A DNA stretch of 64,000 bases from Botryllus schlosseri (lineage: Eukaryota). The position numbers were made by a program, and so were the translations under genes. Shown piece by piece: positions 7,279-30,000 of this stretch. The notes below the pieces were generated by a model that made no database searches, was not told the DNA's origin, and saw only the letters and a program-made list of their open reading frames with translations. Where the stretch lies: positions 15,376,001 through 15,440,000 of the forward strand of contig CM119376.1 of NCBI GenBank assembly GCA_051294905.1, written 5' to 3'. Numbering within the stretch: position 1 is the first letter of the stretch; the number at the start of each line of letters is the position of its first letter.

Positions 7279-8330
7279 GTGTATGTGGTCAAGGGTGTAC
7301 GAGTTTCGAGTAAACGTTAAAAGGGTGTGCCGCAAAATGTTGTAGAGCACTGTACTAGTTGACGACAACGTAAGCTGTAAGCCAGGGGCAGGCAACATAC
7401 GACTTTGCGTCTTATATGATAATGTGGCCCGCGGCTACAGTCTGCCGAGATTCCCCGCTACTTGCTTACTACGTCAAATTTTAGTGGCTGTATGTTATTC
7501 TATAGATGTAAGCGCATTGCGGAGCGTGCGAGAGTGAAGCTTACGCGTAAGTTCGTCGAAGCGGGAAGACTGGCATTATCAGCATTTACGATGTACTCAA
7601 CCCTAATATTGTTTGTGGTAATCATGGTGTTTGTCGACTACAATGGTCATTTACACCAGACCGATATTTCTTATTTTTGAATCCGTAGCCGCCGACTTGT
7701 AGCACGGCACACTTCTAGGCTTTTGTAAGACACGGTCAGGGGTCGCCAACTCAAAATGGGACGCGGGCAACTTTTCAAATGTCGTATAGAAGCCGCGGTC
7801 CGCATGAATTCAATATCGAGATAAAAATAGGCCACACAGTTGAACAACGACCCTATCTCATCACCCACTCAGCCCTAATGAATGGATATCTTGGTAAATT
7901 TGGGGTACCGCGGGCTTATCGAACGCCTTGAAATCTTAATTAGTGATTGCACCGTGTGTTGATTGATCAGAGAGAAGCAGACATGGCGGCGCCTGTATGA
8001 CAATGCTGTTCTCAATCCACATTGCATTCGTCATTATCGGCGAGAAATGGCTTTAAAATGACATTGCTGTCGTTAAAATAGATTCATTAAATACGATTTA
8101 CACCTTGTATATGTGGATAAATGGGGGAATAATGTATCGATTCAGCAATCCGGCCCGCCAAGTACTTAATTTTCCTGTATCCGACCCGCCGACTGGAGTA
8201 GTTGCCCACCCCTGCTGCATGCTCTGATCACTTCTTTTGCGATCAATTTATTTGTGAGAGAGCAATTGAGGCTCAGTAAAATGCCCTATCATTGAATGAT
8301 TCGATCACGGTTGTTCTCACAGGCTACACC

Positions 8331-8529
8331 AGCGTTTCGCGAACACCGAACATATGCAACATCGATTTTTTCGACACCGATCACTTGGAATTGAAATTGA
8401 AATTGACTCGAACATTTTGCTCCGAGTCACGAGTCAATCCACATTTATGATACGCAGAGTCAAGTCATTTTTTGCGAAGTGACTCAAGTCTAGTCGTACG
8501 AAAATTGTGACTCGAGTCATCCCTACACT
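8331..8529. mobile_element. Partial (one-ended) copy related to the GACTCGAGT-rich MITE at 61427-62401
   Basis: Ends ...gactcgagtcatccctacactg. Internal sequence resembles 61500-61680. Confidence 0.6.
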
Positions 8530-9326
8530 GATTCTCACCCTCAATTCAATAATATTATCTCGGATATCGCTGGAAATACATGTCTCAGGCATCCTGATTG
8601 GCAGCCAACACCTAAATTCATATTTTCGAATAGTGCGAATTGGTTAAATTTGAGAAAGGATTCCTGTCCGAGGACATGCCGATTAATTTACATACAAGAT
8701 GTCTGCTACCGAACCGCCACAATACATTGCCACCCGCTGAGTGTTTACGAGACAGGAGTGTTGCCTACCGCGAACAAAATTACCGGATCTTTAACACTAG
8801 ACTTGAGTATCGATGAAGAGTGAGATATGGTAATAATGGTATTCAATGATATTCATGAACGTTTGATTCTTTAGTTTTGAGTTTGGATATCGACTTGTGC
8901 TGTCGCGTTCGTCAGTAGTGTTATGTGATTGTGATCGAGTATTCGGTAGTTTATGCGGAATTATGGATTCTATTAGCATTCCGTTCTTCCCATATCCGTT
9001 GTTGGTACTTGGTAGAATAATAGAGCGCATATAGTAGCATTGACTGGGCGTTTGTCATGTTTCGCACTAATGACATTTTCAAGTGCTTTGTTCTGGTCCC
9101 CGGATTATACATTCGGTTCGTATCAGCGTATACTATATCTGGCGTGTCATAGCGGGACGCATAGTAGTCGTCTTATCTGCATCACGCCCGGCACCGCGCT
9201 GGTTCTATTGCTATATGCAATTCTTGCAGTGCGCACAACAAAATCAGTCGACTGTGCGCGCCGTTTACTGCTGTAAGCTGCCGATAAATATACCCTGTCC
9301 CAATAGTGGCGCGCTGAAGCATCGCG

Positions 9327-12300
9327 ATGCCGTTTCGAAAGCCACGTCCCAGAGTATTTAGAATCGTCACGTACGGCAGACGAGAGGATGAAGATACAAT
9401 TTGCAAGTTTTGTGAGGCGTTAGCTAATGACGAGCCGGCGTTCCAGGTCGAGAAGCCATCACCTGATGTTATGCTCGTGGAAACGAAAATGTTCGGTTCC
9501 GCCAACATTCGAGTACGACAGTAGACAGCTGTAGTGCTGTTATTGATTAATACCGTACAATCCCAACTCTCTTTTAGTTGGAATTCGTCCGCGCAATATT
9601 GAAAGATTTGCACCATGTGCCAGCTCCGATCTACTATCACAAGGCCAACTTCATCCTATTTTTTCGAAGTTCTTTACAGCCTCCGCCTGAGTTTAATATC
9701 AGCGAACCTTTGTCGCACGGGCAATTATACAGAGGTAAGCTCTCATATCACGTTGATTCTAACTAACTTTCAGTTGCCTTGCTCGGCTTTCTCTAGTGAT
9801 TAGTAGGGCTGGGCAAAATCGAGTACTTGAGTGATTCGATTCTGAATCACGTATTACACTTCGAGTCGAGCTGAGCATTCGAGTATCACTCATTATGATG
9901 TCACACCAGATTATACTATGTCAAAGTTCAAATATGTACCTTTTTGTCACCAGAAAGAATCTAATGCCTGTTATCTGTCATGTTAAAGATACTTTGGTAT
10001 TTTTTCGGCCATACCAATTTCATTGCACTTCTGACAATTTTGTGGGATGATCATGACTTTGGAAACGTGTTATTTCCAGTAACGTTCGTTGCTTTGTACT
10101 ATCTCGTATGCTGCGACACACGGCCAATCAAGATTTCAAGGCTTGTTCAGTGAAAAATAGTATCAAAACTATAATTCTCGTTAGTAAATTAACTTTCAGT
10201 TGCGAGGAGCGTATGCTCAGTACTCGAAAAAATCGTCTTTTTCTACTCGACTCGAATCATTAAAATTAATACTCGATTCAGATTTGAGTACTCGAATCAT
10301 TGTGTCCAGCCCTAGTGATCAGAGTTACCATACGTCCTCTTCAAGAGGATTTGTCCTCTTTTTTGAAAGTGTCCTCGGAGGACGCCCATATGTCCACTTT
10401 TTTGAGAATTTTGGTTAAATATAGTGTATTGGTATCCACCAATCAAGCATAATCCGAGAATTATCAACAAAAAACTCAAATGACTCCGCTTTTACTAGTT
10501 GGAATTGAGTCGAATTTGTTTTGCATGGTCTTCAAAGACAGCTCAACAATTTAATGGGGTTGACAGAAAAATTGTGAAAATTTTTTTATTTCAATTTGCC
10601 CTAATAAATCAAACATATTAATTTTATCTGCGGAGTCTCATACTTGTTAGAATTGAACCAAATGTGGTGTGCAGCGTTTTTTTTAGGGTAGCCTGACAAT
10701 TTAATCAGTGAATGGCTGGAATGCGGAAAAAAGTTATTTTTGAACAACCTTGTATATACAATTGAATAGTGTATTCATATTGAAATGAACCGAATATTTT
10801 CGGCTGACACTCGTCAGGGGTAATCGTCAGCAACTAGTAGAGAAGTTGAAAGAACATTGTATATCAACAATCGTATCACAAAATATGACGTCTTGTATAT
10901 CTATAAAGGTCGGTACCTTCAAGTATGTCATACGCCGTGGATAACGATTGAAAAGCAGTGATTTAAACAACAAAATCCTGACAACTGCAACAGTACAATA
11001 CCTTGAGGCAAATAGCGTTGTACGGAATGAATTTCGTCAAAAACGTTCAATGTTCACGTACGTACGTAGAAAGACACATATTAATACCTCACTGATTTTA
11101 GTTATTTTTGTCATCAGCTCACATGTTCCAGTCAAAGCTAGGTTAAACAGTGTCGATAGACACTGGGGATCGTGTGAGCCTATGAAAGGTTCAGGTTCGT
11201 ACGAACGCGAACGTGAACCTGATGATGTCGCGTGACGTCATATTGCAAAGTCCAAAGCCTACATTTCAGTGAAGTGATAGCCTTTGTGTACAGTACACGA
11301 TACCTAGCGACGACTCGGGCCACAGTGCTGAGGTGCATATTGAAGTTTTAAACGTCGCCAAATGTATCAACTTGGACAATCAAATGATATATTATTCCCA
11401 TAAAATCAATATCTTCCGTCGCTTTGCCAACAATTTCGACGAGGACTTGCAAGGGAATATATGCTTACGCCTTAGCGGTCTAGGCCAAACCGGACAAAGT
11501 ATTCGGCGTCTGACTATTGCTACGTTGATATTAGCAGAGTGGGTAACGGGTTTCGATACTTGCTACCGATATTACCCCATTACCAAGTTATACAGCAGTA
11601 GCCAACACCGCAATCGCACGGATTTCGTTTTTATGATACAATAAACTTATGAAATCAAGATTGACCCCGTGCGCAACTGCGCAAGTGCGCATGCAAGATT
11701 TTATACATCAGACAACGATATGCATCATTCGCTGACTACCTATACATGCAGCACCGTAACTGCCGCACCCCAAACCCCCCAATTGGGGGGGGCGAGCTCG
11801 AAGGGGGCCCAAAATTATTTCGTGAATTAGCATAAATCATAGAGTATTTTTTGAAAATTTATGCAATTTTTACAATTATTTTTCGCGCTGCGCGCGAATT
11901 CAAGTAGCCATTTATCTTTATTATTGGGTATTGGGCTATTACCGCGCCACGACCCACCAAGACATACAATCAAGTTTTAGGCCATATAACATGCGACTCC
12001 AAGAAGTGTGCCAGAACAATCGGCAGCGAGAAACCCTTGGCCGAGAAGGCCTATGCCCTTATGCTGACCGAAGACTTCGTTATATATAGAAAATACATAT
12101 AAGTTTAATTGTCCATAGGCGCCTAAATGACTGGCGCCGAATGTTCCTGTCTTTGCAATCTGAACCTCACAAGACAAATACCATCCCGCTGGGAAAATTT
12201 TTATGCCAGTGAAGAAATACCAATTTGAAATCGTGTGCGTCTCTTAGTTTAGAAGCCTATACGTTTGGGCGATTCTATATTTTTTGATATAGCAGACTGG

Positions 12301-15300
12301 AAGTCACGAAATAACATCATGTAGGCCTAACGAAGTCATATCAACGGGTCCGCCCGCCCGAAGATGTTTAATTATTATTTAGGGGCCCTTCCGTTTTCAA
12401 GACACTTCACTCAGCTCTACCGGTAAATCTAATTACGTGAGTGCAGAGGACAATAAATTGATAGCTTAATATATATGCAATCGCCGATCTGATTGACCGA
12501 TTTTATCATAAATTATCAAAAATTTTCGCGCCTCGCGCTGACTCACGATACAGTACAGATGATTTCGTGACAAACGCGAACAACGTGATGGAGGGGTCGT
12601 TTCATCACCCTATGCGAGCCCAAGACCCACGTTTGTGGGGGGCTGACGAGGTGCTGCTTCGTTCCTGCCAACGGGTATACGCCCGAAGATGTTTAATTAT
12701 TATTGAGTGGTCCTACCTTTTCAAACACACCTCACTCAGCTCTACCGGCAAATCTGATTACGTGAGCAGAGAGAAGATAAAAATTGATAACAATATATAT
12801 ACAATTCCCGATCATACTGACCGATTCAATCATGAATTCTAGAAATTTCGCGCACTTAGGCGACAAAAGCTGATTCACTGAACAAACTCCTAACGAATAT
12901 GATAAATAGCGGTAAACAGAGTATCGCCGAAGGGGGATCAGAAGTTCGGGCTATAACCCTATGGGGGGCCCAAGACCCAAGTTTTTTTTTGGGGGGGGGG
13001 GGCTGACGAAGTGCTGTTACGGCCCTGTATACATGTAGTGTATTTCGCTCTTGATGTTGTGTGATTGCGGGTCAAGCTCGTGGCAAAGAGTCACTATAAA
13101 TATTCACAAACCGAAAGCAGGATATTTCGAGCAAACTTTTGTAACAAAGCAAGAGAGAGAGAGAGAGATATGATATTCTTTCTCGCCTGCACCATCGAGA
13201 TGCTTTGGCGACGGAGTTGCGATACGGCCCCATGAGGTCATCTAGTCTGCGCCCCGTTTTTTTTTCTCCTCCATGCTATCCGTGATTGCTGAGCGCCTAG
13301 CAGGATAGCTGCGGATACCATTTTTCGAGTCTTTGGTATGACCCGGCCGGGGATCGAACCCACGACCTACCGCTCGAGAAGCCGGACGCATAACCATTAC
13401 ACTATCTCGCTCGGTTTGAGACTCTCAAGTTGCATACTTGTTTAGTGTAGATTTGCCACGCTGCCAGCGCCATGCATAGTGGCCCGCAGTTGAAATGCAA
13501 TAAATTTCAACCGAAGATGTTATGAAGTGAAAATTGTAATATATGTAAAAGGTTCACAGTGCAGAACCTACCAAGGTTCGTTTGTGAACGTGAACCTCTA
13601 AGTTTCGGAGGTTCGCACACAGAACGCGAACGTGAACTTCACGTTCACACCATCCCTAATAGACACCCATTTCACATGCCATGGTCGGATACACCAGCTT
13701 TCGCACCGGTTGTATAGAACCGCCACACGAAATTTTATGAGATCAGCGAACGGGTGAGCAATTTTTCCGTTACTCGTTACTGCCAATGCGCTTTTGCAAC
13801 AGAACCAACTGAAAAATATGACTTTTATGATATTATCGACTGACAACAAATTTGTATCTGACCCGCGGCCGGTAGGCCGCACTGCACAAAGCACACCAGC
13901 CCGTCCCTAGGCTGTAGGAAACGCTGTGTGTTATTTGAACAAATGTGTGATTGCGTATGTGTTCCGATGGACACACACACACACATAGCCTGACTAACTG
14001 AATAGCAAAGTTGAACTTTTACAGAAATAACTGTTTTTCCACTGCCTGTCGAGCATGGCGGGAACGTTGCCGAAGATGTCTTTACAACGGCTATTGGTAA
14101 TTATACAAAACATGTTTACGCGGATTGTCAACAAGGTTAGTCCCGACTTCATTTGGTTGGATATGATTCTCCAGCTATCGGTGTTCGCTATTCAGCTATA
14201 AACGCTCTTGCCAAATAGTTATAAACAAATAATAGCACCCAGAAGAAGTATAGGCATGATATATAGCAGTGGTCCGGAACCTTTTTTGTCCGAAGAGCCA
14301 TATTGACCCTATTTTTTCCATCTCAACTCCCAAAGAGCCATACATGCCAATGAACTGTTACGTCACCATTGAAAATTCGTCACGTCATGGTAGCAGTAAT
14401 TCGAACTCACTACATGGGATTCCACGTGTGCGTCATATTTTCTTTGTAAAACGGGTATGTATTGTACGGAAATAAAGCTCGAAACGAGAGGTAAGGCACA
14501 GACGGGCCAAGCCTCACCATTGATAACGCAATTCGTCGTAAGTACCTTAGAATTTATTATAACTGATATTTATCGAATGTAACTGTCACACTGATTCCGA
14601 AAATTGAAATAATTCTCGACTTCTCGATTGTCAAGGTTTCCGGCGGTAACACAACATTGCGCTGCACGCATACATTTTATCGCCGGTACTACAGAGCTAC
14701 TTACTAATCAAGAACGTGGATATCTATGGCGTTGTTTGTAATTCGATTTTGTAATTGTGAATGTTACGTCCACGGCAGTTTATTTCGCGCCGTAGATCAG
14801 GAAGACAATGTGTTGTGTATTTGAAAACTGCGTTCTGAAATCGGCGTCATCATGTCTGCCATGCTCTTTGATTAATCAACGTGTCGCACAATTCAAGATG
14901 TCGAGTACATAGAATTCGCGAGTGATATTGACCGCCGGCGTGACAGCAACTTGAATTTTATGATTTTGAAAAGAGGAGGGATGAGCCCTTAAACATGAAG
15001 ACGGCATTGTCTTTACCTCTCAAAGACATGTTTATACTGTCACGAGAATAATTATTCCGGCCGTGATGAAACTTTACCAACAAATCGCTGCAATATTGAT
15101 CAATTCAGTACAAAAATAAATATTCGGCAAAGAGCCATATTTTATTCCCAAAAGAGCCATAGGTTCCCGACCACTGATATATAGGGTTACCATACATCCT
15201 CATTTAGGATTTGTCCTCCTTTTTCATGTTTTTGAAAACTTCCTCCGATGACGCCTAATGTCCTCCGTTTTGGCAATTCGTCCTCCTTTACAGCTTTTAG

Positions 15301-15799
15301 AGGTAAGATAGTGGATACATTCGAGTGAAAATGGGCATAAATGACACTAAATAGGAAATTCGTGGTTCGAACGAAAGTGACGTTTTTTTAGTCTACCAAC
15401 CACAATGTCGTGGAAAATCTACCATTTTTCCAGATTTTACTCCAGTATTCTAAGTCTGAAAATTTTGAAAGTGTCCTCCTTTCCCGATTCCAAAATATGG
15501 TAACCCTATGATATATATCGAATATAGCCTACTGTCGTCTTTTTGTCGAAATATAGCCTACTTTAAAGCTTTGGCTATGCAGATTGAGATCAGAGTGCGA
15601 TGCGGAAACTTTTCTGTGTATTTTTTCCATAGCAACTGTCATGCGTGAAGTGCTGCAGGAAATTGTGGATCATATCCTCAAATGGGGAACAGAACAATTG
15701 ACTCCGTTCGAAGATGAACTATCTACTGTCGATCTTTCTCACGACAAAACTTCATTGATTAACTCAACAATGTGCTATGAGAGAAACAGTATTGCGTGA
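9327..15799 (+). CDS. Unrecognised 4-exon protein-coding gene (~193 aa), possibly a degenerate small-GTPase fold
   Basis: Exons 9327-9512, 9578-9734, 14025-14096, 15633-15799. All introns are GT-AG with matching phases (0,1,1). 582 nt total, in-frame stop upstream of the ATG. Product: MPFRKPRPRVFRIVTYG...PIYYHKANFILFF...GGNVAEDVFTTAIATVMREVLQEIVDHILKWG...RNSIA*. Extra exons in the 4.3-kb second intron are possible. Confidence 0.6.
9804..10314 (+). mobile_element. TAGGGCTGG-family hAT-type MITE (copy 1)
   Basis: TIR TAGGGCTGGGCA...TGTCCAGCCCTA. TSD gtgattag / gtgatcag. Highly similar to 26752-27279 and 45564-46067. Confidence 0.9.
11749..13027. mobile_element. CAGGxCCGTAAC-family MITE, complete copy
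   Basis: TIR CAGCACCGTAAC...GTTACGGCCCTG. Perfect TSD tatacatg (11741-11748, 13028-13035). Internal duplicated modules. Confidence 0.85.
13190..13414 (-). mobile_element. tRNA-derived SINE
   Basis: Minus strand has Pol III box A (TAGTGTAATGG) and box B (GGTTCGATCCC), followed by the core GGTCATACCAAAGACTCGAAAAATGGTATCC...CCTGCTAGGCGCTCAGCA. Diverged second copy at ~52745. Confidence 0.8.
14267..15176. mobile_element. hAT-type (CAGTGGTC) MITE in an intron of the orphan gene
   Basis: TIR CAGTGGTCCGGAACC...GGTTCCCGACCACTG. Perfect TSD atatatag (14259-14266, 15177-15184). Confidence 0.9.
15182..15508. mobile_element. TAGGGTTACC-type MITE
   Basis: TIR TAGGGTTACCAT...ATGGTAACCCTA with gtcctc-rich subterminal repeats. 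The flanking tgatata duplication becomes visible once 14267-15176 is removed. A related fragment is at ~10322. Confidence 0.75.
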
Positions 15800-18009
15800 C
15801 GAATTCTTTCAACTGAAAATATGTATACGTTGGTAACTTGGAATTTCGGGATTTTGTGGCGCACCAACTGGGCCGCTGGTATATACGCGTATATTTTATC
15901 TTCTGTCATTGGATAAATATATTATACTTACTCTACAACTTTCTTGCGGTAGACTGAAGCGATGGTTAGTAGCCTACATATGCTGAATTGCTGATGAATT
16001 CCGAAATGTGAATGTTGCTAACTTTCGATAAACATAGCTTGCCTACCGTCGTTCGTACGTGTCCAGTGTCCACGCCGTATGTAGGTAGCCTATAGGTTTT
16101 CCCTAAATGCGATGTTTGCATGGCGGGAATGTAGGGGGGGGGGGTCGCAACTATATCAATTTGAAAAAATATGTCGCAGTCGTGATTTCCAAGTCGGTAG
16201 TTGTAACTCGCAGCGACGTCTCCCGTATTCCCAATCGTATAGAAGTATTGAACTACATTATAGGGACTAGTAGTCGCAATTTCACATCTGTGGGATAATC
16301 TGAAGCACGATTGAGAAGCGTAATGACATTTTCCAGAGCTGTGAGAATGCAGGGTGTAAGGCGCTATTTGAAGTTGGGACGGAATCGTAGCTTGTAAGTT
16401 TCAACTGCCGGATTCGATAAACGGTACTCTTCCGCTTCCGGCATCAGCAAGGAATTAATTGCCGTGGAGATACGCACGCGTCAAGCGTTCCAGTGTGCGG
16501 ATTGCAGCCGCCCATCACGCTTCGCGCAGACCCTTCTCTGCAACTCCGCTCTCGATAGCTCGATGATTGAACGTGATGGACGAACAGCGTCACATCCTTC
16601 CTGGCCCGTCAACACGCGATTAGCGCCGTAAGCCTAACGTTCCAAAACTTCCTCCTAGCTGCATCACGGTTCCGACCTACTATTCCACTGCAACGTAAAC
16701 ACGAGGAATGCACGGGACAGTTGCAATGTGCAGTGTTCATTTATTTTTCGAAATGAAATTCATTCACACATCGGGTGTATAAAGACTAAGGTAAGGAAGA
16801 GAACTTTGAGAAGAAATCGAGAATTACGTCTGAAACTATAGCCTCGTTTAAAGATGAGGTCGTAAAATAGCGAACGGTTCGCATACAACCCCGGCAAGGT
16901 CCGTCCGTGTCGGGGTCGCACGCAATAATTTAGCGATTAGGCGAGATGCTGTTAAATCGTGAAGCATCTCCGGTCGTAAATTCAGCGAAATTGCACCTGA
17001 CCGCCGAATTTCACGCAGTAAGGTCGCGGCGACGGACTTGTCGCGCGCCAGAGCCCGCTGACAATCGTTACACATTTCAAAAAGGCGCAGCAATAAATAA
17101 TCGGAAAAATTGAGATGCAATAAAACAAAAAAATATAAGTTTAATTAAATCGATGCTCTTGTATAAGTTAAAAAATAGTCCGGTTGTTTAATGGTAAGGA
17201 TCAAATCTCGATCGGGACCTGAAAGGGAGCGGGTGCCGATGTCTGATGCAGGAAAAAAGCACGACGATACTTTACACTGTATTATGGTGATAAGAGTAAA
17301 GCAGATGAAAAGTTATCGCACAAAGAGAAACGCAAAAACACCTTTTCTTCATTTTATTTAGAAAAACAAAAGAAGCAAGTAATCTTGTACCATCCAGCTT
17401 CAAGAATCCATAAACGCGTTCCCTCTGCGTAGCGTCGAGTAGGCTACCACACAGGCCACTCGCTGTCCTCCGGCCATGCAAAGCACGCAAGTAGGCCGTG
17501 CCCGCGCTGACGTAGGGAGCTTGATGACATACCCAGGTGCGCTTCACAAAGTCTTCGCTGAGATTATTTGCGACAGTGGTATCGAAAGACTGATCGTGAT
17601 GCGAGCAGCCCGGGGGGAGGGGCGAATATCACGAATGCATCTATTCAAAACCTCGGCGATCGCCGGGTCGAATATGCGAAAGACATTTCGAGTAGGAAGA
17701 CTACAGTCCAAGCTCTAACATCCACAGCAGCATTTAGCCAGAGGGAGGGGGGAAGGAGGTGAAAATATTTCTAGTCCCTCCAAAATACGGGAAGCAGTCA
17801 CCGTCACGTGGTACATACTCCGATTATCTGCCTCCTCCTGGCTACGCCCCACATACCCACACGAACTTTACCCGGAAAGTGTCACTTTGGTGCCGATAGC
17901 GGCGATTTCAAACATACACAGGCCCGCGGCCACTCGCTCGGCAAGATATCAGTTGGCTTCCACCGTTCCTGTGGGGTCCACGGTTAACACGCGTCCCGGC
18001 CCAGGCCGA

Positions 18010-21000
18010 TCACCGCCTGCCGCGCTTTTGCTTCGAGCCATCGTTACGCCCCGCGGAAAACTGCGCCTCGTGCCGCCCGCCGCAAGCCCGGCACGCCACA
18101 CCGCACCCGTGGCACGCTTTTAACGGTGGGTACAAGCACAAGCACGGACATATAAGACTCAGCGCCGCCAGCGCGGCCCATCGCCGGGCCGAGTTGCCCC
18201 GCCCGCACGAACAAGGGTCCGCATCATAGTCCCCCTCGTCGTCCCGGCAGCAGTGGTAAAACACCGAGTGCACGCAGCACATGCACGTGGCGCGGTCGAT
18301 ATTCCTAAGACACGGGTCCGGCGCCTCGCGACAAGACCCGGGCCTGTTTCGCTCGTGGTTAAACACCTCCTGGCAGTGCCGGCACCGGGACCGCTCGGCC
18401 AGGTCGTCCTTGTGTTTACGCGGTTTTCGCTTGGCGCTCAGACGCGGGCAGCAGCATGACCCGCCACCGTCATCGGCGCTACCGTAGTCCGCCTTATGCC
18501 TCGATTTCTTAGGGCTGGACAGTAAACTGTTCCCGGGCTCGCATCGGATAGCGTCGTACTTAATCGAGTCAATGTGCGACGTGTAGTACATGTCCGAACG
18601 GCTGTAAAACGCTGACGTGTCGTTAGACGCCATGATGGACAACGTCCCGCTTTGGGGTGGTTGATAAGGCGGGCATCCACGTCTCGTCGATAAAATAGGG
18701 TGGTACTGATCGATGAGAGCCAGCGGCTTGTAATTACCAGACCGTATCGTGGTCAGGGCCGCCGTCATTTCCGACGCGGTACCCCGGTCCAGCCTCTGCG
18801 AGGGCTTGGACGACGAAAAAAACACGTACGAGTTGGGCTCGGTCGGTTTCAGGTCTCTGCGCCTTTCGAGGTCGTCCAGGTGCGGGGTCTTGGTGTGGCG
18901 CGATCGCTGGTGGTGGTGGTGCTGGCTTCTCTGACGACCGTGGGCCGGCTGGACACGACGATCGTCGCGCCCGCGCGCTCGACTAGGTTGCGTTTCCACG
19001 GGCCGGTCGCCGCTTAGTGAGCCAGATTCTGGCGTTTTCGCCGCGTCCGGCTCGGTGTTATCGGGCACGGGCATCTAAAAACGATTGAGTTTTTTGTTTT
19101 TAATCTACACTTCCTAGAACACGGGTTCTTAACAAGGGGTGCCAAGCTATTTTTTCACTCAACATCACCGATTTTCCTACTTATTGCTCAAAAATACAGC
19201 GCAAAGGAGAGGTGAAGCACAGACGATTGAAATATAACGATATAGAAAAGGTGAATGGAACCGGAATCGAGTTTCTTGGTATGACTGACAGGTTGTTAAC
19301 GCTTTGCAAAAAAGCAGATTGATTGAAAATATGACTCTAAGTCGTCAATCAGTTCATATTTCTCCTACGTCGAGTCCTAGTCAAGTTAGGTCCTTTGAGG
19401 GCAGTGAATAGAGTCAAGTCACGATTCCTGTCATTGCAACACTGATTATAAGACTGATTTTAACGCATGCATTCAACACGCCGGTCATAAATTCCGCTTA
19501 TTACAATTATATTTACTTCCGTCGGCCATTAAACGAGAGATTTTCAGGAAAATCAGAGTGTACGAGCTCTAAAAGGTTAAAAAACACTGTCCTAGAATCT
19601 TACCTGCGGTTTGGGCAACGCCACTACGTCCCCTTCACGGCAGGCACCCGTTTGCGCATGCGTCGGCAACGTAAACGACGACGCCTCGTACGAGGACCCG
19701 TCTTGGTGCAGGTGACGATTGAGAAAGGTGAGATTCGCCTGGTACCCCTGCTGCTGCGGCAAGGGCCACCGAAAGTGCGACTGCCCCAAGTCGCAAGAGG
19801 ACGGCGTGTCGCAATACCGCGGCGACGCCGACGACAACAGCGACAGCGTGGGCGCGGTCGACGAGACGACAGGCTGCCGCGTCAGAGATCGATTCTAAAC
19901 AGAGGGCATAAATACAGTCAGCGTAGATTCGTGGCCGAAAATTGCTACTCAATGACATGAAGCCATTACCGGGCCGAGACTTGTCAAAACTAAGTAAAGT
20001 GGAAGCAGAAACTGAAGGCTCGAATAATAATCAAAAAGTTATTTGGTCGAGAGGTGGCATAGGCTACTTTGAAGTTTGAACAGTTCGTCGAAGGAGACTC
20101 CATTCGCAACTGAAAGACGTATCTTCAAATTACCGCGATACAGAAACAATTTCACTCGGTTCTCATAAGAATTTTGCTACGAAAGGTGATGCTAAAACTA
20201 ATTTCTAAACATCAAGTAACTAGAAGTAAGCAATTTTCCAAAAAGAATAAGCATAAATAGAAGTAACGCAATCTACAAACACAACCACTCGAGTACTCCG
20301 TAAAAGTAGAAGTGGCGTACTTTGTTTTTCTTTTACTGTTTTATTCATCATTCACTTCGTTAGTCATGTCGTTAAAAAGTCACCTTGATTGAGGTACTGG
20401 ATGAACTCGAGTTGTGAACAGTGCGCACGGGCCTGCCAGGCTTCGGTCCGGGCGAGACCCCCCGGCGCGTGCCGCGTCTGGACGACGACGTGGAAGAAGC
20501 GGACGACGTCGAGTGTTTCTTGTGGGTGTCCAGGGGTGTGCGACGCGCCGAAAACGACCCGTTCTCGCATGGCGAAGAAGACCCCGTCGACGACGCTGGC
20601 GAAGTGCAAGACTGAAATAGAACGCAAAATAAATTGAAATCGTGCAACCGCAGCGCTCTCCTGCGGACCCACGCTTCAGCGGTGGGTTTCAAAATTCAGG
20701 TTTCAGCAGTTCAAATTCAAGTACCCAAGTACTGCTTACAAGAGTGTCACAACATCAACAACATCAGAGTAGTTCAAGTCTACATGACAGTTTTCAGTTT
20801 TTAGGCAAAACTAGGCCCACTGGCCCAGAACACCTATTTTTACACTCGCTCCAAAATTGCTGCTTCTACTTCAATTCACGAGTTACTTCTACTAACAACA
20901 ACTGCTTTGACCACCACTGATCAAATTACAGATCTTACCACAGCGCTGTGCACTGTTTCACCAGACAGAGCTGATCTGCGGTCTAATATTAGCACACAAT

Positions 21001-24000
21001 GGCTTTGGACGACCGCACCAATCCCACGACTAAATCGCTGCTCACTCAGCCGGCAGTCAAGTCCAAATAGCGCACCCCATAACATTCACAATCCTAATGA
21101 GCGGTTCTTTATTTTTATCTGTTCAAGAAACACTAAATTTATGAGAATGCCACACTCGAGCATACAAGTCACATGCTTAAGTGTGGCAAGTTCAACTACG
21201 TGTCTCTCAATCTATCGTCCGCCTCAACCTGTAGTGTCCTATGTAACAGTATTCGATTGTGATCTTTCCGCTGTCTGTCTTTCCCCAGTCGCCCAGCAAA
21301 CGGCATTCGGACGCACGCTATATTTAGCCGATGCCTAATCTCGCAGAGAGAAAAATACAGGCTATAAAAAAAACTCACCGAATGATGCTCGTCTGACGCC
21401 CGACTGCACATTAGGGTTGTTCAGATTTGAAAAATTGTCAGGAAACTTCGATGCTTGTGACCCAAATGAAGGTTTAGTACATAAAAACACTTTTATAACC
21501 AATTCTGGTCATCTTCGTCGTGATCTTCTATCCCCGAAAGCCCCCCAAAGATCCACGGGGCAATTCTCCTTACTACTGGATATGCAATGTTGACCACGTC
21601 ACCGGTTTATTGCTTTTGTGACGTTATCAGTTGAAAACGACCGTGTAGAGATGATATATTGCAATAAAATAGCCATGATTTCAAAATTGTACTTAACTGC
21701 AGTCCCATTAAGGCCACATGCGTAACGATTTCACCCTGCAAAACCTGTCTATCATGCTCATGGGAATCATGTATTGGTTGCACCATTGACATCGGCTTGT
21801 TTTGGATCGTACATTGAAGAAGCGCCGTTGAGTTGCAATTCGTCAACAAATACTGATATTCCCAGCTAGTTTTCAGCCATAAGATATTATTCAAAGGTAT
21901 GTAATGTCAGTAATACTTTTCTCAACTTCAAATCATCTGTAAAATACCGAGTTATCTTATTTTATGGTAGACTGCAATTTAGTTGAAGAAGAATGCCTGA
22001 AACAATGCATCAACACAATGTTCAGCGCTTGCCTTATAGATATTCTTGTCATATTCCATACGTTGTCAACCTCTTCAACAGTTAGAAGGACACAGTCCTG
22101 CGTTGTGGTAGTTTCGGGGCGATTTTCTTTCAGATATGGCGGGTGTAGTAGAACCTCATCTAGAGTCGGTAACTTGGAGTGACTAATACACTCGGATAAA
22201 TATCCTTCCGAATAGTGACCAGAATATCAGACCAAATAGTGGACAGACCTGAATCTTGTTCATGATTGGTCCGCAAAACCCATATCCGCTTTGTTTCAGA
22301 CTTTCTTCTGCAACTAAATTGCAGTCTACCATAAAATAAGATAACTCGGTATTTTACAGATGATTTGAAGTTGAGAAAAGTATTACTGACATTACATACC
22401 TTTGAATAATATCTTATGGCTGAAAACTAGCTGGGAATATCAGTATTTGTTGACGAATTGCAACTCAACGGCGCTTCTTCAATGTAGGATCCAAAACAAG
22501 CCGATATCAATGGTGCAACCGATACATGATTCCCATGAGCATGATAGACAGTTTGTGCAGTGTGAAATCGTTATGCATGTGGCCTTAATGGGACTGCATT
22601 TAAGTACATTTTTGAAATCATGGCTATTTTATTGCAATATATCATCTCTGCACAGCCGTTTTCAACTGATAACTTCACAAAAGCTATAAACCGGTGACGT
22701 GGTCAACATTGCATATCCAGTAGTAAGGAGAATTGCCCCATGGATCTTCGGGGGGTTTTCGGGGATAGAAGATCGCGACGAAGATGACCAAAATTGCTCA
22801 TAAAAGTGTTTTTATGTACTAAACCTTCATTTGGGTCACAAGCATCGAAGTTTCCTGACAATTTTTCAAATCTGAACAACCCTACTGCACATACTGCTGG
22901 CACTGCTGCTCGCATAGTCGGGAACTGAAAAAGAATAGCCATCGATAAGCCGTGGTCGGGCTAAAGGCTAACAAGGCCGCGAGTAGCAAGCTAGCCGCGA
23001 TATCCTATTCACAAAAACAGGTTGATGGGAATACGATTGTTCGCGCGGCCCGCACATGCCTACATTTACGCGGAATCCCGTCGTTTCGAGGCGGATGAAA
23101 GGGCGGAAATGGAATTCAAATAAACACAGGCCCGGGAACGCACGCATACGCTACATAATGGCGAAGCCAGCCTACGGAAAAATAACGTTTGCGGTATTCC
23201 GCGAAGCTGTAATCAAGTTGTGTCGAACGCGTTCTGCAAATAAAAGCAGACATCCGCCGTTAAGCGCTGTAATGCGTGCGACAACGCGAAACCTACATAC
23301 GTAACCCTCTGGCAAAATCGAGGTACGGGATTTCGTTTAGGTTCGCGCGGCGTTCAACGCCGAAATTCCATTGAGAGAACGAGAGAGAGCGCTCGCGCTC
23401 GCTGTCACTCCTTTTAAATTTCCCAGTGTCGTTTCCGGTCCCGTTGAACAGTTTTTCAGATACGCGCGACAAGCGAATATATTCTCTCGCGCCGTAGAAT
23501 CGGCAAGGTCACAAGTAACGACATCCGAAGCATGGCGACGCCATTTCTTCGGCGAGTCGATGTTACAGCCTTTAGCCGGAATATAGCTAAAACGCCATTC
23601 GGATTTGGCCGAGGAACAACATTTCGATTGTAATGATCGCTATCCGGTCGACGTAATCACACTAATTTACACCAAACGGATACAAATAAGGCGATCTATA
23701 TTTAGAAGATTCATTATTACGTTATCGAGACAATGCTGGCTTTAATTCGGAAGTCAAATTTGAACCGCGCGGAATCATTGATTATAACGCGAACGCACAC
23801 CAAAAGCAGCAGCAGTGGACGACGCGCGCCGATGACCAACAAACGCCGGCTCTGTGACCAAACAATATCGCCATCCGTCCCGATATAATCGCTTCATTTC
23901 AACGACCACAGGCGTCGCGCAAAGTCGGAAGTGAACGCCCCGCTTTCGAGGCCACCGCGAAACTGCCATAACAGCCGACGAAGACTCGAAGGCCGTATTG

Positions 24001-27000
24001 ACAAGGGAATAGCATGCGCGAACTGCCAATCGCCGACTGAATTGCGGAAATGCCCCTAGACATCGCAACGGCAGATACCATGTGAACGCTTCATTCAACG
24101 CCACATTCTCCTTGGGAGAGGGATATCAATTCGACAAGGTTTCTTTATATTCAAGCCGCAATGCTCCGCTGTATGACCCGACACGAGTAGCCGCAGCGCG
24201 GCCAGGCGTCGCCAAGATTACGCGCGGGCAAGACGCCGGAGCGGGGCCACTAGCGACAACATGGCCGGGCTGGCAAAAACAAATTTCTCGGCGCTATTTC
24301 GGAAGTTCAATAGTTCCACTAACCGCAGGTAAACCTACGTTGCGGACGCGAAAACTCGGGAGACAACGTATTGCCCTTCTAATCACGCGATATCACAATA
24401 ACAAAGGTGGTCGAAGTACTCATCATTGGTGCTCAGCTAGAAGTAAAAGTAGCGATTGCGATTTCAAAGCAAGTAAAAAAACTAGTACTCTATGACTAAT
24501 CAGTAATCACCTCCTAAAAAAACACGAAAACAGTTCACCCAGAAGTAGACATAGAGAAAGATCATAAGCACTCAAATAGTGTCGGTAAGTGCAGCGATTT
24601 CCAAGTAAGTAAATAAAACGGGTATTCTAGGACTAGTATTACCAAAAAGAATACGAAGCCGTCAGGTAGAAGCGGTAGGAGTCTAAAATCGTAAGCACTT
24701 GGGTAACCAGCACAGCACAAGTATTGACAGCCTATTCAAGCATATTCACGGAAGCGGCGTTCGTTAAACATAAACACAATATCCACACAAGCAAATCGCG
24801 TATCGAGCACATTTCCGATTTTATAATTACATAAACCGCGCAAGCCCATTTTCACTCGCTCTCACTTCCGCTCCGCGTGATTATACCATCAAGTTTATTG
24901 TGTAAGTCGCCAGCGTCACATCGCGATCGAGTAATCTCGGTTCCGCGCAACGGCGCGTCAACATACCGTTCGACACAGAAGAAAAAGTCTTCACAACGCA
25001 CAGAACAAATTCCGCGACCACTGACAATGAGGTCATACAGTGGGGATAATACAGTGCCATTGCGGATATGACTGTGCGGCATGGACGTTTTAATTCTTTT
25101 TGATGTAATCATCCGAAGTTACCGATGTACTTCCCTAGTATAAGCAAACACGCGCTCACGACAAGACATCCTGTCTCCGCTATAGGCAGTGCTTCACCGG
25201 TTACTAGTTAATTCGGGACTTGGAGTCACCCAATTATAATCCTAACTTACCCTACCCTAAGCCAAACCAGACTTCATTAACACATACATCCCCATTCACC
25301 AAGTGGCGTATATCGCAAATCACGCTCATGATTAATCAAACATTAACTTTCGAATATATAACTACAATATTTACGCATGCAATGCCAAATTCACGAAGTG
25401 CCCTATTACATTCGTTTTCAAATATATTAATACAAAAATTATCGCAGTCAAAATATTAGTTATTGCATTTCTAACACTAATTCCCCAAATGTCGAACTCA
25501 CGAACTACCCTACCATATTACCAAAATACAAGCTCATATAATGTGAAACATTCATTTACGAACTCACTAATACAATATTTATGCATTATTTTCATAATAA
25601 TCAGATATTACATTTCCAGTATCGAATGCTCTGGTAACCGTCAGGGTTTTCGAGCCGTAAAAAGCGCGCGTTGAGGAAGAATTCATCAACCCAACCGAGT
25701 TTTCGAGTTCTGCACATTTACGACGAACCAGCAGGACAACATGTTATGGTCGCTAATTCGCGATGTCTTTGACAAGGGGAAAAGCAGTCCGCTGCCTCAA
25801 CGACGCTGCGCAGACGGTGTTGACAGCTGCGCGCGGAGGAGTAGCGGAAGCGGTGAGATAGCGCGCGCTGTGACGTGTACGCGTGTCCGTTGTTATGCAC
25901 CTGGTATCCGGTACGGTTTAGCGGGCGGATGGCATTTAATGGAGGGTATCATAAAATTCCTTCGGTATTACCGCCGCCGTGCAACGTCCCGTCGACGCGT
26001 TACGAAACTCGCCGGAATATCGCCATTCACAGCGCGGCGACTAAACAACTGGTTCGCGTCAACCCAACAAGCCCGCGTCTCAAAGGACTAATGGTTAGGA
26101 AACGACGGTGTGCTAACATTTACTTAGGATTTTACTTCGCCAGCGGATGTTGACTTAGCCTTTTCTATGCGCTGCCCTCGTAAACCAACATATCTCTGTT
26201 TGGCGAGTTTGCACAAGATATAGCTTCGAGACCCAGTCGATTCGGCAGCCGTCCGCGCGCTGCGGTGTCGTCATGAACAACGGGGTGATTATAAAGCACG
26301 CATCCGGGCCAGTGACGAATGTCCTAATTACAGATTTGCACAAAATACCAATCTAGTTAATTGACGGTCAACTAACTACTGTTTTTTGAGTAGTTCTAGT
26401 TGTAAATTTTCGAAGTGTGTAGTTCTAGTTGCGCATTAAAAAATAGTTGTCGAACAACTATAAAAAACGTGTAGTTTGGTTCGGTGACGTGTTTGCAGTT
26501 ATTGCTAGCTCAGAGCCATTAATGCTGACAGTGGCGTGGCCAAGGGGGTGGGTTATGGGGGTCGAGACCCGTCCCTATTATGATCAAATACAAATTAACG
26601 AGTTGTTTCGCAATTTAATTTGTTAGTCGTGTTTTAGCGAGTCGCGGATTTCTCAACGTAGTTAGTGTTGAGTTTTGAAAAGTAAGTTGTTCCGGTTGCA
26701 GCGCACTTTTAAAATCTAGCAGTTTGTCCGTGTTCAACTGATTAGCGCGAGTAGGGCTGGGCAAAATCGAGTACCTGAGTGATTCGATTCTGAATCACGT
26801 AAAATGCTTCGAGTCGAGTCGAGTAATCGAGTATCACTCATTATGACGTCATAGCAGAATATTATTTCTCAAAGTTCAAATATGTACCTTTTAAGCGACC
26901 ACATAGAATATAATGCCTGTTATTCATCATATTAAGGATACTTTGCTATTTTTTCGACTATACCGATTTCATTGCACTTGGTGACAATATTGTGGGATGA

Positions 27001-30000
27001 TCATGACCTCGGAAATGTGCTATTTCCAGTAACGTTGGTAGCTTTGTACTTCATGTTTCGCATGCTACGATACGGCCAATCAAGGTTTCAAGGCTTCAAA
27101 AGTGAAATTAGCATAAACTCGTTGATCGTTGATAAACTCCTCGTTGATAAATCAACTTTCAGTGGCGCGGAGCGTATAATTTCAGTACTCGAAAAAATCG
27201 TATTTTACTACTCGACTCGAATCATTAAAATTAATACTCGATTCAGATTCGAGTACTCGAGTCATTGTGCCCAGCCCTAAGCGCGAGTCAACGACTCGCG
27301 ATCGTATCAACGCCGACAACAAAAGCAAACCTGCGCCCGGCATCGGAAAATCGCAGGCGATAGATACCATCGCAAATATCCGGCCAATTACGCCGAAGCG
27401 GACGTTACGGCGTACGCGGTTTCGCTTTATCACGTCGACAATTCCGGCCGCGCCAAATGACACCGACTTCAAAGACCGCGACGAGGAACGACAATAACCA
27501 CGACGGTATTTAGAAATCATACGCCAATATAATAAGAAGCGGATGTTTTGAGTAATGTTACTCTCCACAGAGCATAATAATGTTTCATTGTTCGCGTAGC
27601 AGCGTGTAACCGTGTACTTACTTCTCGACAACTGTTCCAACGCGAACCGCACGCCCCTGTTAAAAGAGCGCGCTTCCGCCGGCGTGTAAAAAGTCAGCCC
27701 CATTTTGTGATCGCCCACTTGCCAATGGTGAAAAGTCCCGATGGTTTCGTGGAAGACCATGTTGCGTTGGATGAGACAGTCGAGGGTTACCTGCGCGAAA
27801 AGTGTGTGAATCAGTCTCGCGAATCTTAGGCGGAATACGGGCGGCTGCGCGCGAAAGAATTCAGCAATCTCTCTTTCCCGCTAAGGCCCCCCCGGGGGAG
27901 ATGGCGGTTATCGCATCATATAGGATGATTAAAACGGAAACGAAGCTAGTACAGGCGCGTTAATCATCGCTACTGTAAATTCCGGTAATCTGCCGTAATC
28001 TCGGCGTGTAGCAGTCGAGTTATTTCCAAAACAGCGGAGATTAAGGAATTTTCATAATCTCCCATCCGGTACGCTGGAGATAATACCGACTCCGATTCAA
28101 CGTGTTCAACTCGACCAGCCGAGGTTGCCGCGCATAATAAGCGACAGCTGATATCACCACACGAACGGATGGCAGCAAGCGGCACGCAGGCCGTGTTTTG
28201 CGCGATTTCAGCGCCGCCCGGCGTGTTATTACGGCTGGATACGACATGACTAGCAGTCGATTCACCGCTAAACAGGAAATTTCTAATAACACACGCGAGT
28301 AATCCGCTGTAACGTTTACTCGGTGCGGACGCGCGCGCGTAATACACTGACAACGCCCGCACGCCGATAGTACGAGTCCACTCGGAAAATTGCTCAGTAA
28401 ATTACTGCGTCGGGAATACTAAACCGCCCAATCAGATTGGTGTGGGTTCGAGATGTTTTAAATTAATAAAATTGATTAATGAATTCCGAAACGTCGGGAA
28501 CACGAGATATCGCGGCGTCAACATTCGTTGGCCGGTTAACGCGACAGCGTGTAATTCGCGGCATGCGTGCTCCGAAATCTCCGACGAGTGAGCGATCGCC
28601 ACTTTAATTGACAACGCGGATGTAAGCACGGCGAATACAAGGTGTTTTAAGAAGGATACGAAAATAGTTTGGAGATGACTACCCCGGGCTAGTTTCCTGC
28701 TTTGCGTGACCTCGATTTGCTCGAGCGAAAACGAGATCTTTCGCCGGCTCACAGAGTCAGCGGGCATGAAAAAGCACAAATGAAATCCAGACCAGGAGAT
28801 GCTTAGCGACGCGGGATTACCTTCTTGTCACTCATCCGCCAGCCGTAGATGCGGTATCTTCGCTTGTCCATGCTCTCGTAGATGCCGATCTTGCTCTGGC
28901 CCCCGTTCGCGTAGTGAACCCACCCGCCCAACGTGTCGTCCCGGGTCATGACAATCCCCAAAACCCTGACGACGGGTCTATCGCTGTAAAATCAAGAACA
29001 CGCCGCGTTAAAACCCTTCGGAATCATCGAAATCGAATCGCGCAACATTCGCGCGGCGACATCGGATAAGAGTAAATACAGGTTTCGAGTTGCTAAGGTC
29101 TGGACCTTGTCACGCGAGAAATTCCTCTGTTTGTTTACGCCGAAAAATCCCTCGCTCGGTCGCATGCGAGCGCTACCCAGTCTAATATTCGTTCTTAGAA
29201 AGAACCCGGCGTTTTCAGGCGACGGACTTGATTGCATTCGCGCGAGCCGCCGAAAAATGCGAGGCCCATCCCAAAATCTGGACGGAGAGACCGTGACGGC
29301 GAAAGAAATGTAATCGTGTCGCCACACGGCGTCTAAGCTGTTTATATTTCCACTGTGACATTGCACCCTCGGGCAATCGGCGTCCGACCCGGCGCAACAC
29401 AGAGTTGTTCATTGTGTCTAATCCGAATCTTGAAAAAATCGCTAGAAAAAAAGCCAGCAAGCGAAGCGGGCCGTAGCGGTGAAGATGATTCAAACCAGCA
29501 CACATTCACCGGACGGGCATTCGCTTCGCGCGGCGAGATGTAACAGTATATCTCAGCACAAGAAGCGTCCGATAAGCGGAAATTGCTCGCAATCCGATAT
29601 GTAAACCGATAGCGGCACGGTCTCCGAGCGAGTAGCTTCCACCGTAGGGACTCAGTTCATTGTGAATGCTTACGGGACCATTCGCTTGTCGTTTCAAGTT
29701 GATATTCGTCCGCAAATCGCCAGAAATCAAGATGGCGTGAAGGGAAGGCTGGTAAGTCGGTTTTGGATAACCCGGTGTATCACCGCGGCCGCGTCACAGC
29801 TCGGCAATACATCCGAGGTTGCGTTATCGCCAGTATATCGCAGGCCTCCACAAAGGCGTCCGGTGTGCGTTGACTGGCTTCCCCACTCGACATCGGGAGA
29901 GAGCGTACTTCACCTAATCTTATACGCGGCTCGACAATCCATATTTACATCCGATCGCAATCCATTCGGTGCCTTTCGACTGGCGTCGGCGTGCCGATAC

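What the first reader, a model, noticed from the sequence alone, without database searches (positions are those of the whole stretch)
21379..22924. Transposon inside a SPRED coding exon, with TSD-supplied splice sites (introner-like removal or mutant allele)
Seen: the EVH1 exon ends in phase 1 (27622) and the next obvious exon starts in phase 0 (20611), so a 3n+2 exon is missing. Removing the 1473-bp element plus one TSD copy gives exactly that: a 65-nt exon (IPDYASSSASSMCSRASDEHHS) with a strong acceptor (ttctttttcAG, 22925) and a strong donor (GTGAGT, 21378). On the sense strand the TSD reads ATGTGCAG. The first copy offers a GT donor (22890) and the second an AG acceptor (21404). Splicing between them removes the whole element in frame (59-nt exon, MCS replaced by I). 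The alternative donors GTATGT (22894) and GTAGGG (22885), joined to that AG, would frameshift. Knowledge: DNA transposons that become spliceosomal introns using TSD/TIR splice sites (introners) are known, including in marine eukaryotes. Inference: this is either nascent intron gain in a Ras-MAPK regulator or a disrupted allele segregating in this haplotype.
Basis: partly seen in the sequence, partly recalled or inferred. Interest (0 to 1): 0.9.

Follow-up and report, generated by a model that had tools for sequence, protein, structure and literature searches.

The report
Transposon insertion allele in SPRED exon
A 1.5-kb hAT-type DNA transposon has landed inside a small, conserved coding exon of the Ras-MAPK regulator SPRED in the assembled haplotype of a sea squirt. 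Other DNA and RNA samples of the species carry the uninterrupted exon, so this looks like an ordinary segregating mutant allele, not a new intron.

Summary
A 1473-bp non-autonomous element (21412-22884) has 597-nt inverted arms, TAGGG termini and an exact 8-bp duplication (ATGTGCAG on the gene's strand). It splits a 65-nt exon of a minus-strand SPRED gene.

An RNA contig from another sample (X12) joins 27622 to 22924, then 21379 to 20611, then 20384 to 19894. The encoded peptide is conserved in two other ascidians. Clavelina has the same small exon (62 nt, same phases), uninterrupted at that point.

The empty site also exists as DNA. One 4.1-kb contig from another sample (X2) runs through it with intron on both sides. 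A contig from the source sample (X25) stops exactly where a graph assembly (word length 31, assumed) would stop if that animal carries both alleles.

No canonical splice pair can remove exactly 1481 nt. No transcript uses the proposed 22890/21404 junction, and that donor is the weakest of the three nearby GT donors. No RNA from a known carrier covered the gene, so how the insertion allele is processed remains untested.

Verdict: a polymorphic, probably heterozygous and probably null hAT-like insertion allele. The introner reading is unsupported.

The parts
21412..22884 (.). Non-autonomous hAT-like foldback/MITE-type element, 1473 bp
   Evidence: Inverted repeat I1. Termini are unique in the window. 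No ORF of note and no Rfam match. Word depth is 8,000-17,000 in the source-sample DNA contigs against about 15 in the flanks, so the family is high-copy.
21412..22008 (.). Terminal inverted repeat, low arm (597 nt)
   Evidence: 25 mismatches in 597 against the other arm. The outer 85 nt are identical.
22288..22884 (.). Terminal inverted repeat, high arm (597 nt)
   Evidence: As RNA, the two arms fold into one long hairpin, -1101 kcal/mol.
22009..22287 (.). Central 279-nt loop between the arms, non-coding
22885..22892 (-). Target-site duplication, copy 1 (ATGTGCAG on the minus strand)
   Evidence: The empty-site joints in X2 DNA and X12 RNA skip 1481 nt with 9 ambiguous letters, which are the 8-nt TSD plus a shared T.
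21404..21411 (-). Target-site duplication, copy 2
22885..22924 (-). 5' part (40 nt) of the split 65-nt SPRED exon
   Evidence: The X12 RNA contig has a loose end behind 22924 that equals the end of the upstream exon.
21379..21403 (-). 3' part (25 nt) of the split 65-nt SPRED exon
   Evidence: The joint 20611->21379 has GT..AG ends on the minus strand in the X12 RNA contig.
27622..27790 (-). Upstream SPRED exon (end of the EVH1/WH1 domain), ends in phase 1
   Evidence: Pfam WH1, E = 2.3e-6.
20384..20611 (-). Downstream Ser-rich SPRED exon, starts in phase 0
   Evidence: X12 RNA contig piece 20384-20611 joins on to 19894.
18010..19074 (-). Open frame of the last coding exon, with the Sprouty-related Cys-rich domain (exon start not mapped)
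   Evidence: Pfam Sprouty, E = 1e-29. Homologues are SPRED proteins of ascidians and fishes.

Best explanation
This is a recent, still polymorphic insertion of a high-copy, non-autonomous hAT-type DNA transposon (597-nt inverted arms, TAGGG termini, 8-bp TSD) into a conserved 65-nt coding exon of an ascidian SPRED gene. The assembled haplotype carries the insertion. The sequenced animal probably also carries the intact allele, and other animals carry and express the intact allele. On the insertion allele, read-through puts a stop codon six codons past the insertion point (...SSMCSRVVQI*). Skipping the exon shifts the frame. The allele is therefore most likely a loss-of-function or strongly hypomorphic allele kept heterozygous, not a new intron. 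Shown: the anatomy, the exon model, the empty site in DNA and RNA, and the conservation of the peptide and of the exon. Inferred: heterozygosity of the source animal and loss of function.
For: Anatomy and TSD.

Gene identity: WH1 and Sprouty domains and SPRED homologues.

Exon model and intact exon in RNA: the X12 contig (907 nt, depth 26.9) carries joints 20611->21379 and 21402->22884 (skips 1481). Its loose ends match exon B and position 19894.

Empty site as DNA: X2 contig 10 (4104 nt, depth 99) covers 20788-21402 and 22884-26300 contiguously, intron included.

Source animal: X25 contig 18 fits 24278-22880 and has 17 unplaced letters. That makes 22 letters past the TSD, which is exactly what a contig built from words of 31 letters (the word length I assumed) would carry for an empty allele before it merges with the insertion path. 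Its third mismatch fits TAGGG against TCGGG. X25 also shows the X2 variants at 21345 and 21366 at part of the local depth (12.2 of 30.1 and 15.5 of 44.6).

No canonical pair removes exactly 1481 nt (sequence).

Conservation: the peptide SS-x-C-S/G-R-x-SD-E/D is conserved in two other ascidians. The Clavelina exon is 62 nt, has the same phases and is uninterrupted.

Read-through stop and exon-skip frameshift.
Against: No RNA from an animal known to carry the insertion covered the gene (X40 had zero depth on the SPRED exons), so rescue by splicing is untested.

Heterozygosity of the source rests on the length arithmetic of one contig. I did not see its 17 unplaced letters.

Contig sets drop rare variants, so absence of the insertion in X2 and X12 is not proven.

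Several in-frame GT-AG pairs exist, so a partly functional product is possible.
Confidence: 0.8

Rival explanations
1. Nascent intron (introner-like). On the insertion allele the spliceosome removes the element through GT/AG sites in or near the two TSD copies. The candidates are 22890/21404, or other in-frame pairs such as 22894/21393. The 597-bp hairpin, which brings the ends together, might help. The gene would stay functional with a small in-frame change.
For: GT and AG are present in the TSD copies, and eight stop-free in-frame donor/acceptor pairs exist. The arms fold into a very stable hairpin. Transposon-derived introns are described in tunicates: Fritillaria (reviewed in PMC11282704) and Styela clava introners (PMC12130899).
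Against: No such joint was seen in any of the four runs. The insertion is polymorphic. The in-frame donor tat|GTGCAG lacks the +4 to +6 consensus and competes with the better GTATGT and GTAGGG donors, which shift the frame when joined to the AG at 21404. The acceptor has no pyrimidine tract (AACAACCCTAATGTGCAG). The change would remove a Cys conserved across ascidians.
Confidence: 0.12
2. Exact removal by non-canonical splicing, as in Fritillaria. On this reading the intact 65-nt exon seen in RNA would come from insertion-bearing DNA.
For: The RNA joint skips exactly the element plus one TSD copy. Fritillaria removes MITE-derived introns that have non-GT/AG ends (PMC11282704).
Against: The same 1481-nt joint stands in an unspliced genomic contig of X2, so an empty DNA allele exists and is enough to explain the RNA. 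Intronic low-depth contigs of X12 carry the X2 haplotype's variants (20973, 20980, 21055, 21089). All mapped introns of this gene are GT-AG.
Confidence: 0.03
3. Assembly artefact or somatic insertion: the element is not in the germline at this site.
For: No listed contig of the source sample is shown bridging an exon/element junction (most pieces were not listed).
Against: A perfect 8-bp TSD at the exact ends of the inverted repeat is the mark of true transposition, not of a chimeric join. The X25 contig stops where it would if an insertion path branches there. The source-sample runs hold more of the junction-region words than X2 does (0.74-0.88 against 0.61).
Confidence: 0.03

Closest known systems
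Non-autonomous hAT-superfamily elements (MITE or foldback-like derivatives)
   Same: 8-bp TSD. The TIR terminus TAGGG fits YARNG. The TSD ATGTGCAG fits the hAT target consensus nTnnnnAn (consensus motifs recalled from my own knowledge). No coding capacity and high copy number.
   Different: The arms are very long (597 of 1473 bp), so it looks like a foldback element. No autonomous partner or transposase was found here. The family was not matched to any named family.
Maize Ds (hAT) insertions in exons that are spliced from pre-mRNA (wx and adh1 alleles; from my own knowledge, not checked here)
   Same: A hAT-type element sits in a coding exon, with cryptic donor and acceptor sites near its ends that could give leaky, slightly altered products.
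   Different: Splicing was demonstrated for Ds. Here none has been observed.
Introners (Micromonas, Aureococcus, dinoflagellates, Styela clava; PMC12130899; review PMC11282704)
   Same: A multi-copy TIR element with a TSD lies in coding sequence of a marine eukaryote. The TSD contains GT and AG.
   Different: Introners are defined by copies that are annotated, spliced introns. This copy is polymorphic, has no observed splicing and cannot be removed exactly with GT-AG ends.
MITE-derived non-canonical introns of Fritillaria borealis (Henriet et al. 2019, as reviewed in PMC11282704)
   Same: Tunicate host, TIR plus TSD at the boundaries, hairpin-forming ends.
   Different: Fritillaria has a modified spliceosome and mostly non-GT/AG introns. 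The mapped introns of this gene are all GT-AG, and an empty DNA allele explains the intact mRNA.

Membership tests
hAT superfamily DNA transposon (non-autonomous) | 8-bp target-site duplication | tested here: met
   ATGTGCAG at both ends. The empty site holds one copy.
hAT superfamily DNA transposon (non-autonomous) | Terminal inverted repeats beginning YARNG | tested here: met
   TAGGG at both termini. The motif itself is from my own knowledge.
hAT superfamily DNA transposon (non-autonomous) | hAT transposase (BED or dimerisation domain) in an autonomous relative with the same termini | not testable with these tools
   There is one copy in the window. No other copy of the family could be fetched.
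Introner (intron-generating transposon) | The copy is removed from mRNA as a spliceosomal intron | tested here: inconclusive
   No splice joint across the element in four runs, but no RNA from a known carrier covered the gene.
Introner (intron-generating transposon) | Many family copies coincide with introns of genes | not testable with these tools
   Only the window is available. The family is high-copy, but the locations of the other copies are unknown.
Introner (intron-generating transposon) | Splice sites supplied by the element or TSD so that the reading frame is kept | tested here: inconclusive
   In-frame GT-AG pairs exist but are weak. Exact removal with canonical ends is impossible.
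SPRED (Sprouty-related EVH1-domain protein) | N-terminal EVH1/WH1 domain | tested here: met
   PF00568, E = 2.3e-6, on exon 27623-27790.
SPRED (Sprouty-related EVH1-domain protein) | C-terminal Sprouty-related Cys-rich domain | tested here: met
   PF05210, E = 1e-29. The best named hits are SPRED1/2/3.

The most novel reading that the evidence does not exclude
The insertion allele is not null. In carriers, the 597-bp hairpin brings the two TSD copies together and the spliceosome removes the element in frame, through 22890/21404 or another of the in-frame pairs. If so, this would be a segregating first step of transposon-to-intron conversion, caught in a conserved exon of an ascidian signalling gene.
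Probability: 0.1. Interest if true: 0.7.

Novelty: new member of a known kind. Interest (0 to 1): 0.27.

Why it matters
As it stands, this is a natural, probably null allele of a Ras-MAPK inhibitor, carried heterozygously in a wild ascidian. It shows that a high-copy hAT-type family has been active recently enough to leave a polymorphic insertion. That is useful for annotation: gene predictors will break or mis-splice SPRED on this haplotype. It is also useful as a population marker. It is not surprising in a very polymorphic, transposon-rich genome. It would matter more if carriers turned out to splice the element out, because that would give a testable, segregating case of intron birth in a chordate.

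Tried and rejected
1. I looked for other copies of the family, to learn its target preference and whether copies sit in introns. There are none in the window. There is no exact match to the terminus in metagenome contigs. The 95-aa TIR ORF has no homologue in the protein collection. Earlier notes of the scan gave nothing on this family.

2. Raw RNA reads (X40) had zero depth on the SPRED exons at the 6% of the run that was read. They only hit other copies of the repeat.

3. Two loose-end flanks that match the 8-9 nt outside the TIR were searched for in the window, to test for trans- or alternative splicing. They are absent, so they come from other loci.

4. An Rfam scan of the element found nothing.

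5. The supplements of the 2025 introner paper are not held, so the Styela clava introner families could not be compared.

6. I considered a Merlin reading (10-bp TSD, GG termini). The 10-mers differ, so I rejected it (sequence).

Full report
**What is in the sequence**

Read on the minus strand, the region is: acceptor ttctttttcag (AG ends at 22925), 40 nt of coding sequence ending in ATGTGCAG, then TAGGGTTGTTCAG ... CTGAACAACCCTA, then ATGTGCAG again, 25 nt of coding sequence, and the donor GTGAGT (from 21378).

- The repeat finder gives one inverted pair, 21409-22008 against 22288-22887, and nothing comparable elsewhere in 20300-27800.
- My own comparison of the arms from the termini inward gives 25 mismatches in 597 nt (95.8% identity). 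The outer 85 nt are identical.
- The 26-nt terminus occurs only at these two places in the 64-kb window. Zero matches are expected by chance.
- The element is therefore 21412-22884 (1473 bp), flanked by an exact 8-bp direct repeat.
- It has no ORF of note and no Rfam match. As RNA it folds into a single hairpin of about 600 bp (-1101 kcal/mol).

**The host gene**

The flanking exons belong to a minus-strand SPRED gene.

- Pfam WH1 matches exon 27623-27790, and Pfam Sprouty matches the last large exon.
- Homologues are SPRED proteins. The nearest named one is from the ascidian Clavelina lepadiformis at 41% identity, so the host is a tunicate.
- The upstream exon ends at 27622 in phase 1 before GTAAGT.
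- The downstream exon starts at 20611 in phase 0.
- Joining the two exon pieces without the element and one repeat copy gives 65 nt (3n+2), reading IPDYASSSASSMCSRASDEHHS.

**Is the exon real?**

Yes, on three grounds.

1. An RNA contig of run X12 (907 nt, depth 26.9) lies on 20384-20611. It joins 20611 to 21379 with GT..AG ends on the gene's strand, then joins 21402 to 22884. It ends at 22924 with loose letters that are the reverse complement of the end of the 27622 exon. At its other end it runs on to 19894.
2. A transcript contig of a related ascidian (P0001; L002) reads ...ALEQLARVAQAEYTSSSASSTCGRLSDDHQSSCTSPASSTGSSS. Clavelina reads ...SSGSSTCSRTSDEPHS.
3. In the Clavelina genome the orthologous piece is a separate 62-nt exon with the same phases (1 in, 0 out) and the same donor TCG|GTGAGT. 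It is uninterrupted at ...ACT TGC AGC AGG..., the point that corresponds to the insertion.

The ancestral state is therefore one small exon with no intron at this point. The insertion separates a conserved Cys from a conserved Ser/Gly-Arg.

**Is the insertion fixed?**

No.

- Run X2 comes from another sample. Its 441 million letters of contigs are comparable to the DNA contig sets of the source sample (444-575 million letters in X1, X3-X5 and X26). It holds a 4104-nt contig (depth 99) that covers 20788-21402 and 22884-26300 without a break. Intron lies on both sides, and exactly 1481 nt is missing, with 9 ambiguous letters at the joint (the 8-nt repeat plus a shared T). That is the empty site as genomic DNA.
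- The same 1481-nt joint is in the spliced X12 RNA contig.
- The low-depth intronic contigs of X12 carry the X2 haplotype's variants at 20973, 20980, 21055 and 21089. This fits transcription from an empty allele.
- I checked all nine registers for removing exactly 1481 nt. The ends are AT..TA, TG..AA, GT..AT, TG..TG, GC..GT, CA..TG, AG..GC, GT..CA and TA..AG. None is GT-AG, GC-AG or AT-AC (sequence). Canonical splicing therefore cannot regenerate the intact exon from the insertion allele.

**The sequenced animal**

In run X25 (source sample), contig 18 (1416 nt, depth 14.6) fits from 24278 down to 22880 and leaves 17 letters unplaced.

- An empty-site allele continues after the repeat with TCGGG..., while the element continues with TAGGG.... 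An aligner would therefore carry the fit 5 nt further with one mismatch, to 22880. The contig has three differences, and two of them are the SNPs listed at 23326 and 23550.
- Five plus 17 is 22 letters past the repeat. In a graph assembly with words of 31 letters (the word length I assumed), that is exactly the length an empty-allele path keeps before it merges with the insertion path: 1 allele-specific base, plus 8 of the repeat, plus 22.
- In X2 the contig runs straight through the site, so there is no branch there.
- X25 also shows the X2 variants at 21345 (12.2 of 30.1) and 21366 (15.5 of 44.6).

I infer that the source animal is heterozygous. I did not see the 17 letters, so this remains an inference.

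**What the insertion allele would make**

- Read-through gives ...SSMCSRVVQI and then a stop, six codons past the insertion point.
- Skipping the exon shifts the frame.
Its donor tat|GTGCAG lacks the +4 to +6 consensus that the gene's real donors have (GTAATC, GTAAGT, GTGAGT, GTGACT).
- That donor sits between two better donors, gca|GTATGT (22894) and gca|GTAGGG (22885). Both shift the frame when joined to the AG at 21404.
- The acceptor has no pyrimidine tract.
- None of these joints was seen in any run. However, the raw RNA run X40 had zero depth on the SPRED exons, and the X12 animals need not carry the insertion. Processing of the insertion allele is therefore untested.

**The element family**

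- Word depth inside the element is 8,000-17,000 in X25 against about 15 in the flanks. Depth is also high in X2, and RNA runs hold transcribed copies. The family is high-copy and some copies are transcribed.
- The 8-bp duplication, the TAGGG terminus (YARNG) and the target ATGTGCAG (nTnnnnAn) fit the hAT superfamily. Those consensus motifs are from my own knowledge.
- At several positions where the arms differ, one arm keeps the family's majority letter. The copy's lineage has drifted about 2% per arm. This does not date the insertion.

**Comparison with known systems**

- Transposon-derived introns are documented in tunicates. Fritillaria borealis has MITE-derived non-canonical introns (reviewed in PMC11282704). 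Introners are reported in Styela clava (PMC12130899).
- Membership of that class needs spliced copies, and that was not met here.
- The closest functional analogy is maize Ds (also a hAT element) inserted in exons and partly spliced out. That is from my own knowledge.

**An oddity**

Six X40 reads and one X12 contig come from other loci yet match the 8-9 nt outside the TIR. With hundreds of copies and the hAT target bias, I estimate that about 1% of element ends would match at 7 of 9 positions or better by chance. I therefore treat this as probable chance plus the table's selection of best-supported rows. A real target preference is not excluded.

**Verdict**

The introner reading remains an untested minority possibility.

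Noticed in passing
window 21403-21446: RNA reads (X40) and one RNA contig (X12) from other copies of the element match the 8-9 nt outside the TIR (A+CTGCACAT) of this copy, although their outer flanks are not in the window. This is either chance among hundreds of copies or a target preference for ATGTGCAG-like sites.
   Followed up: partly
window 20779-20817: A stretch of about 35-40 nt in the intron has very high word depth in all DNA runs (bin depth 884-1393 against 15-99 around it). It has loose ends on both sides in all four runs, so it is a fragment of another dispersed repeat.
   Followed up: no
window 24429-24595: Contigs of X2 (DNA) and X12 skip 167 nt here. This is an indel polymorphism in the large intron; the window haplotype has the longer form. 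No obvious TIR or TSD on inspection.
   Followed up: partly
window 20749: The X2 haplotype lacks 9 nt in the intron. It differs from the window by about 0.3-1.5% across 20788-26300, which indicates a highly polymorphic species.
   Followed up: no
L001 10351-10412: Clavelina lepadiformis SPRED keeps the same small exon (62 nt, phase 1 to 0, donor TCG|GTGAGT). Position and phases are conserved between the two ascidians.
   Followed up: yes
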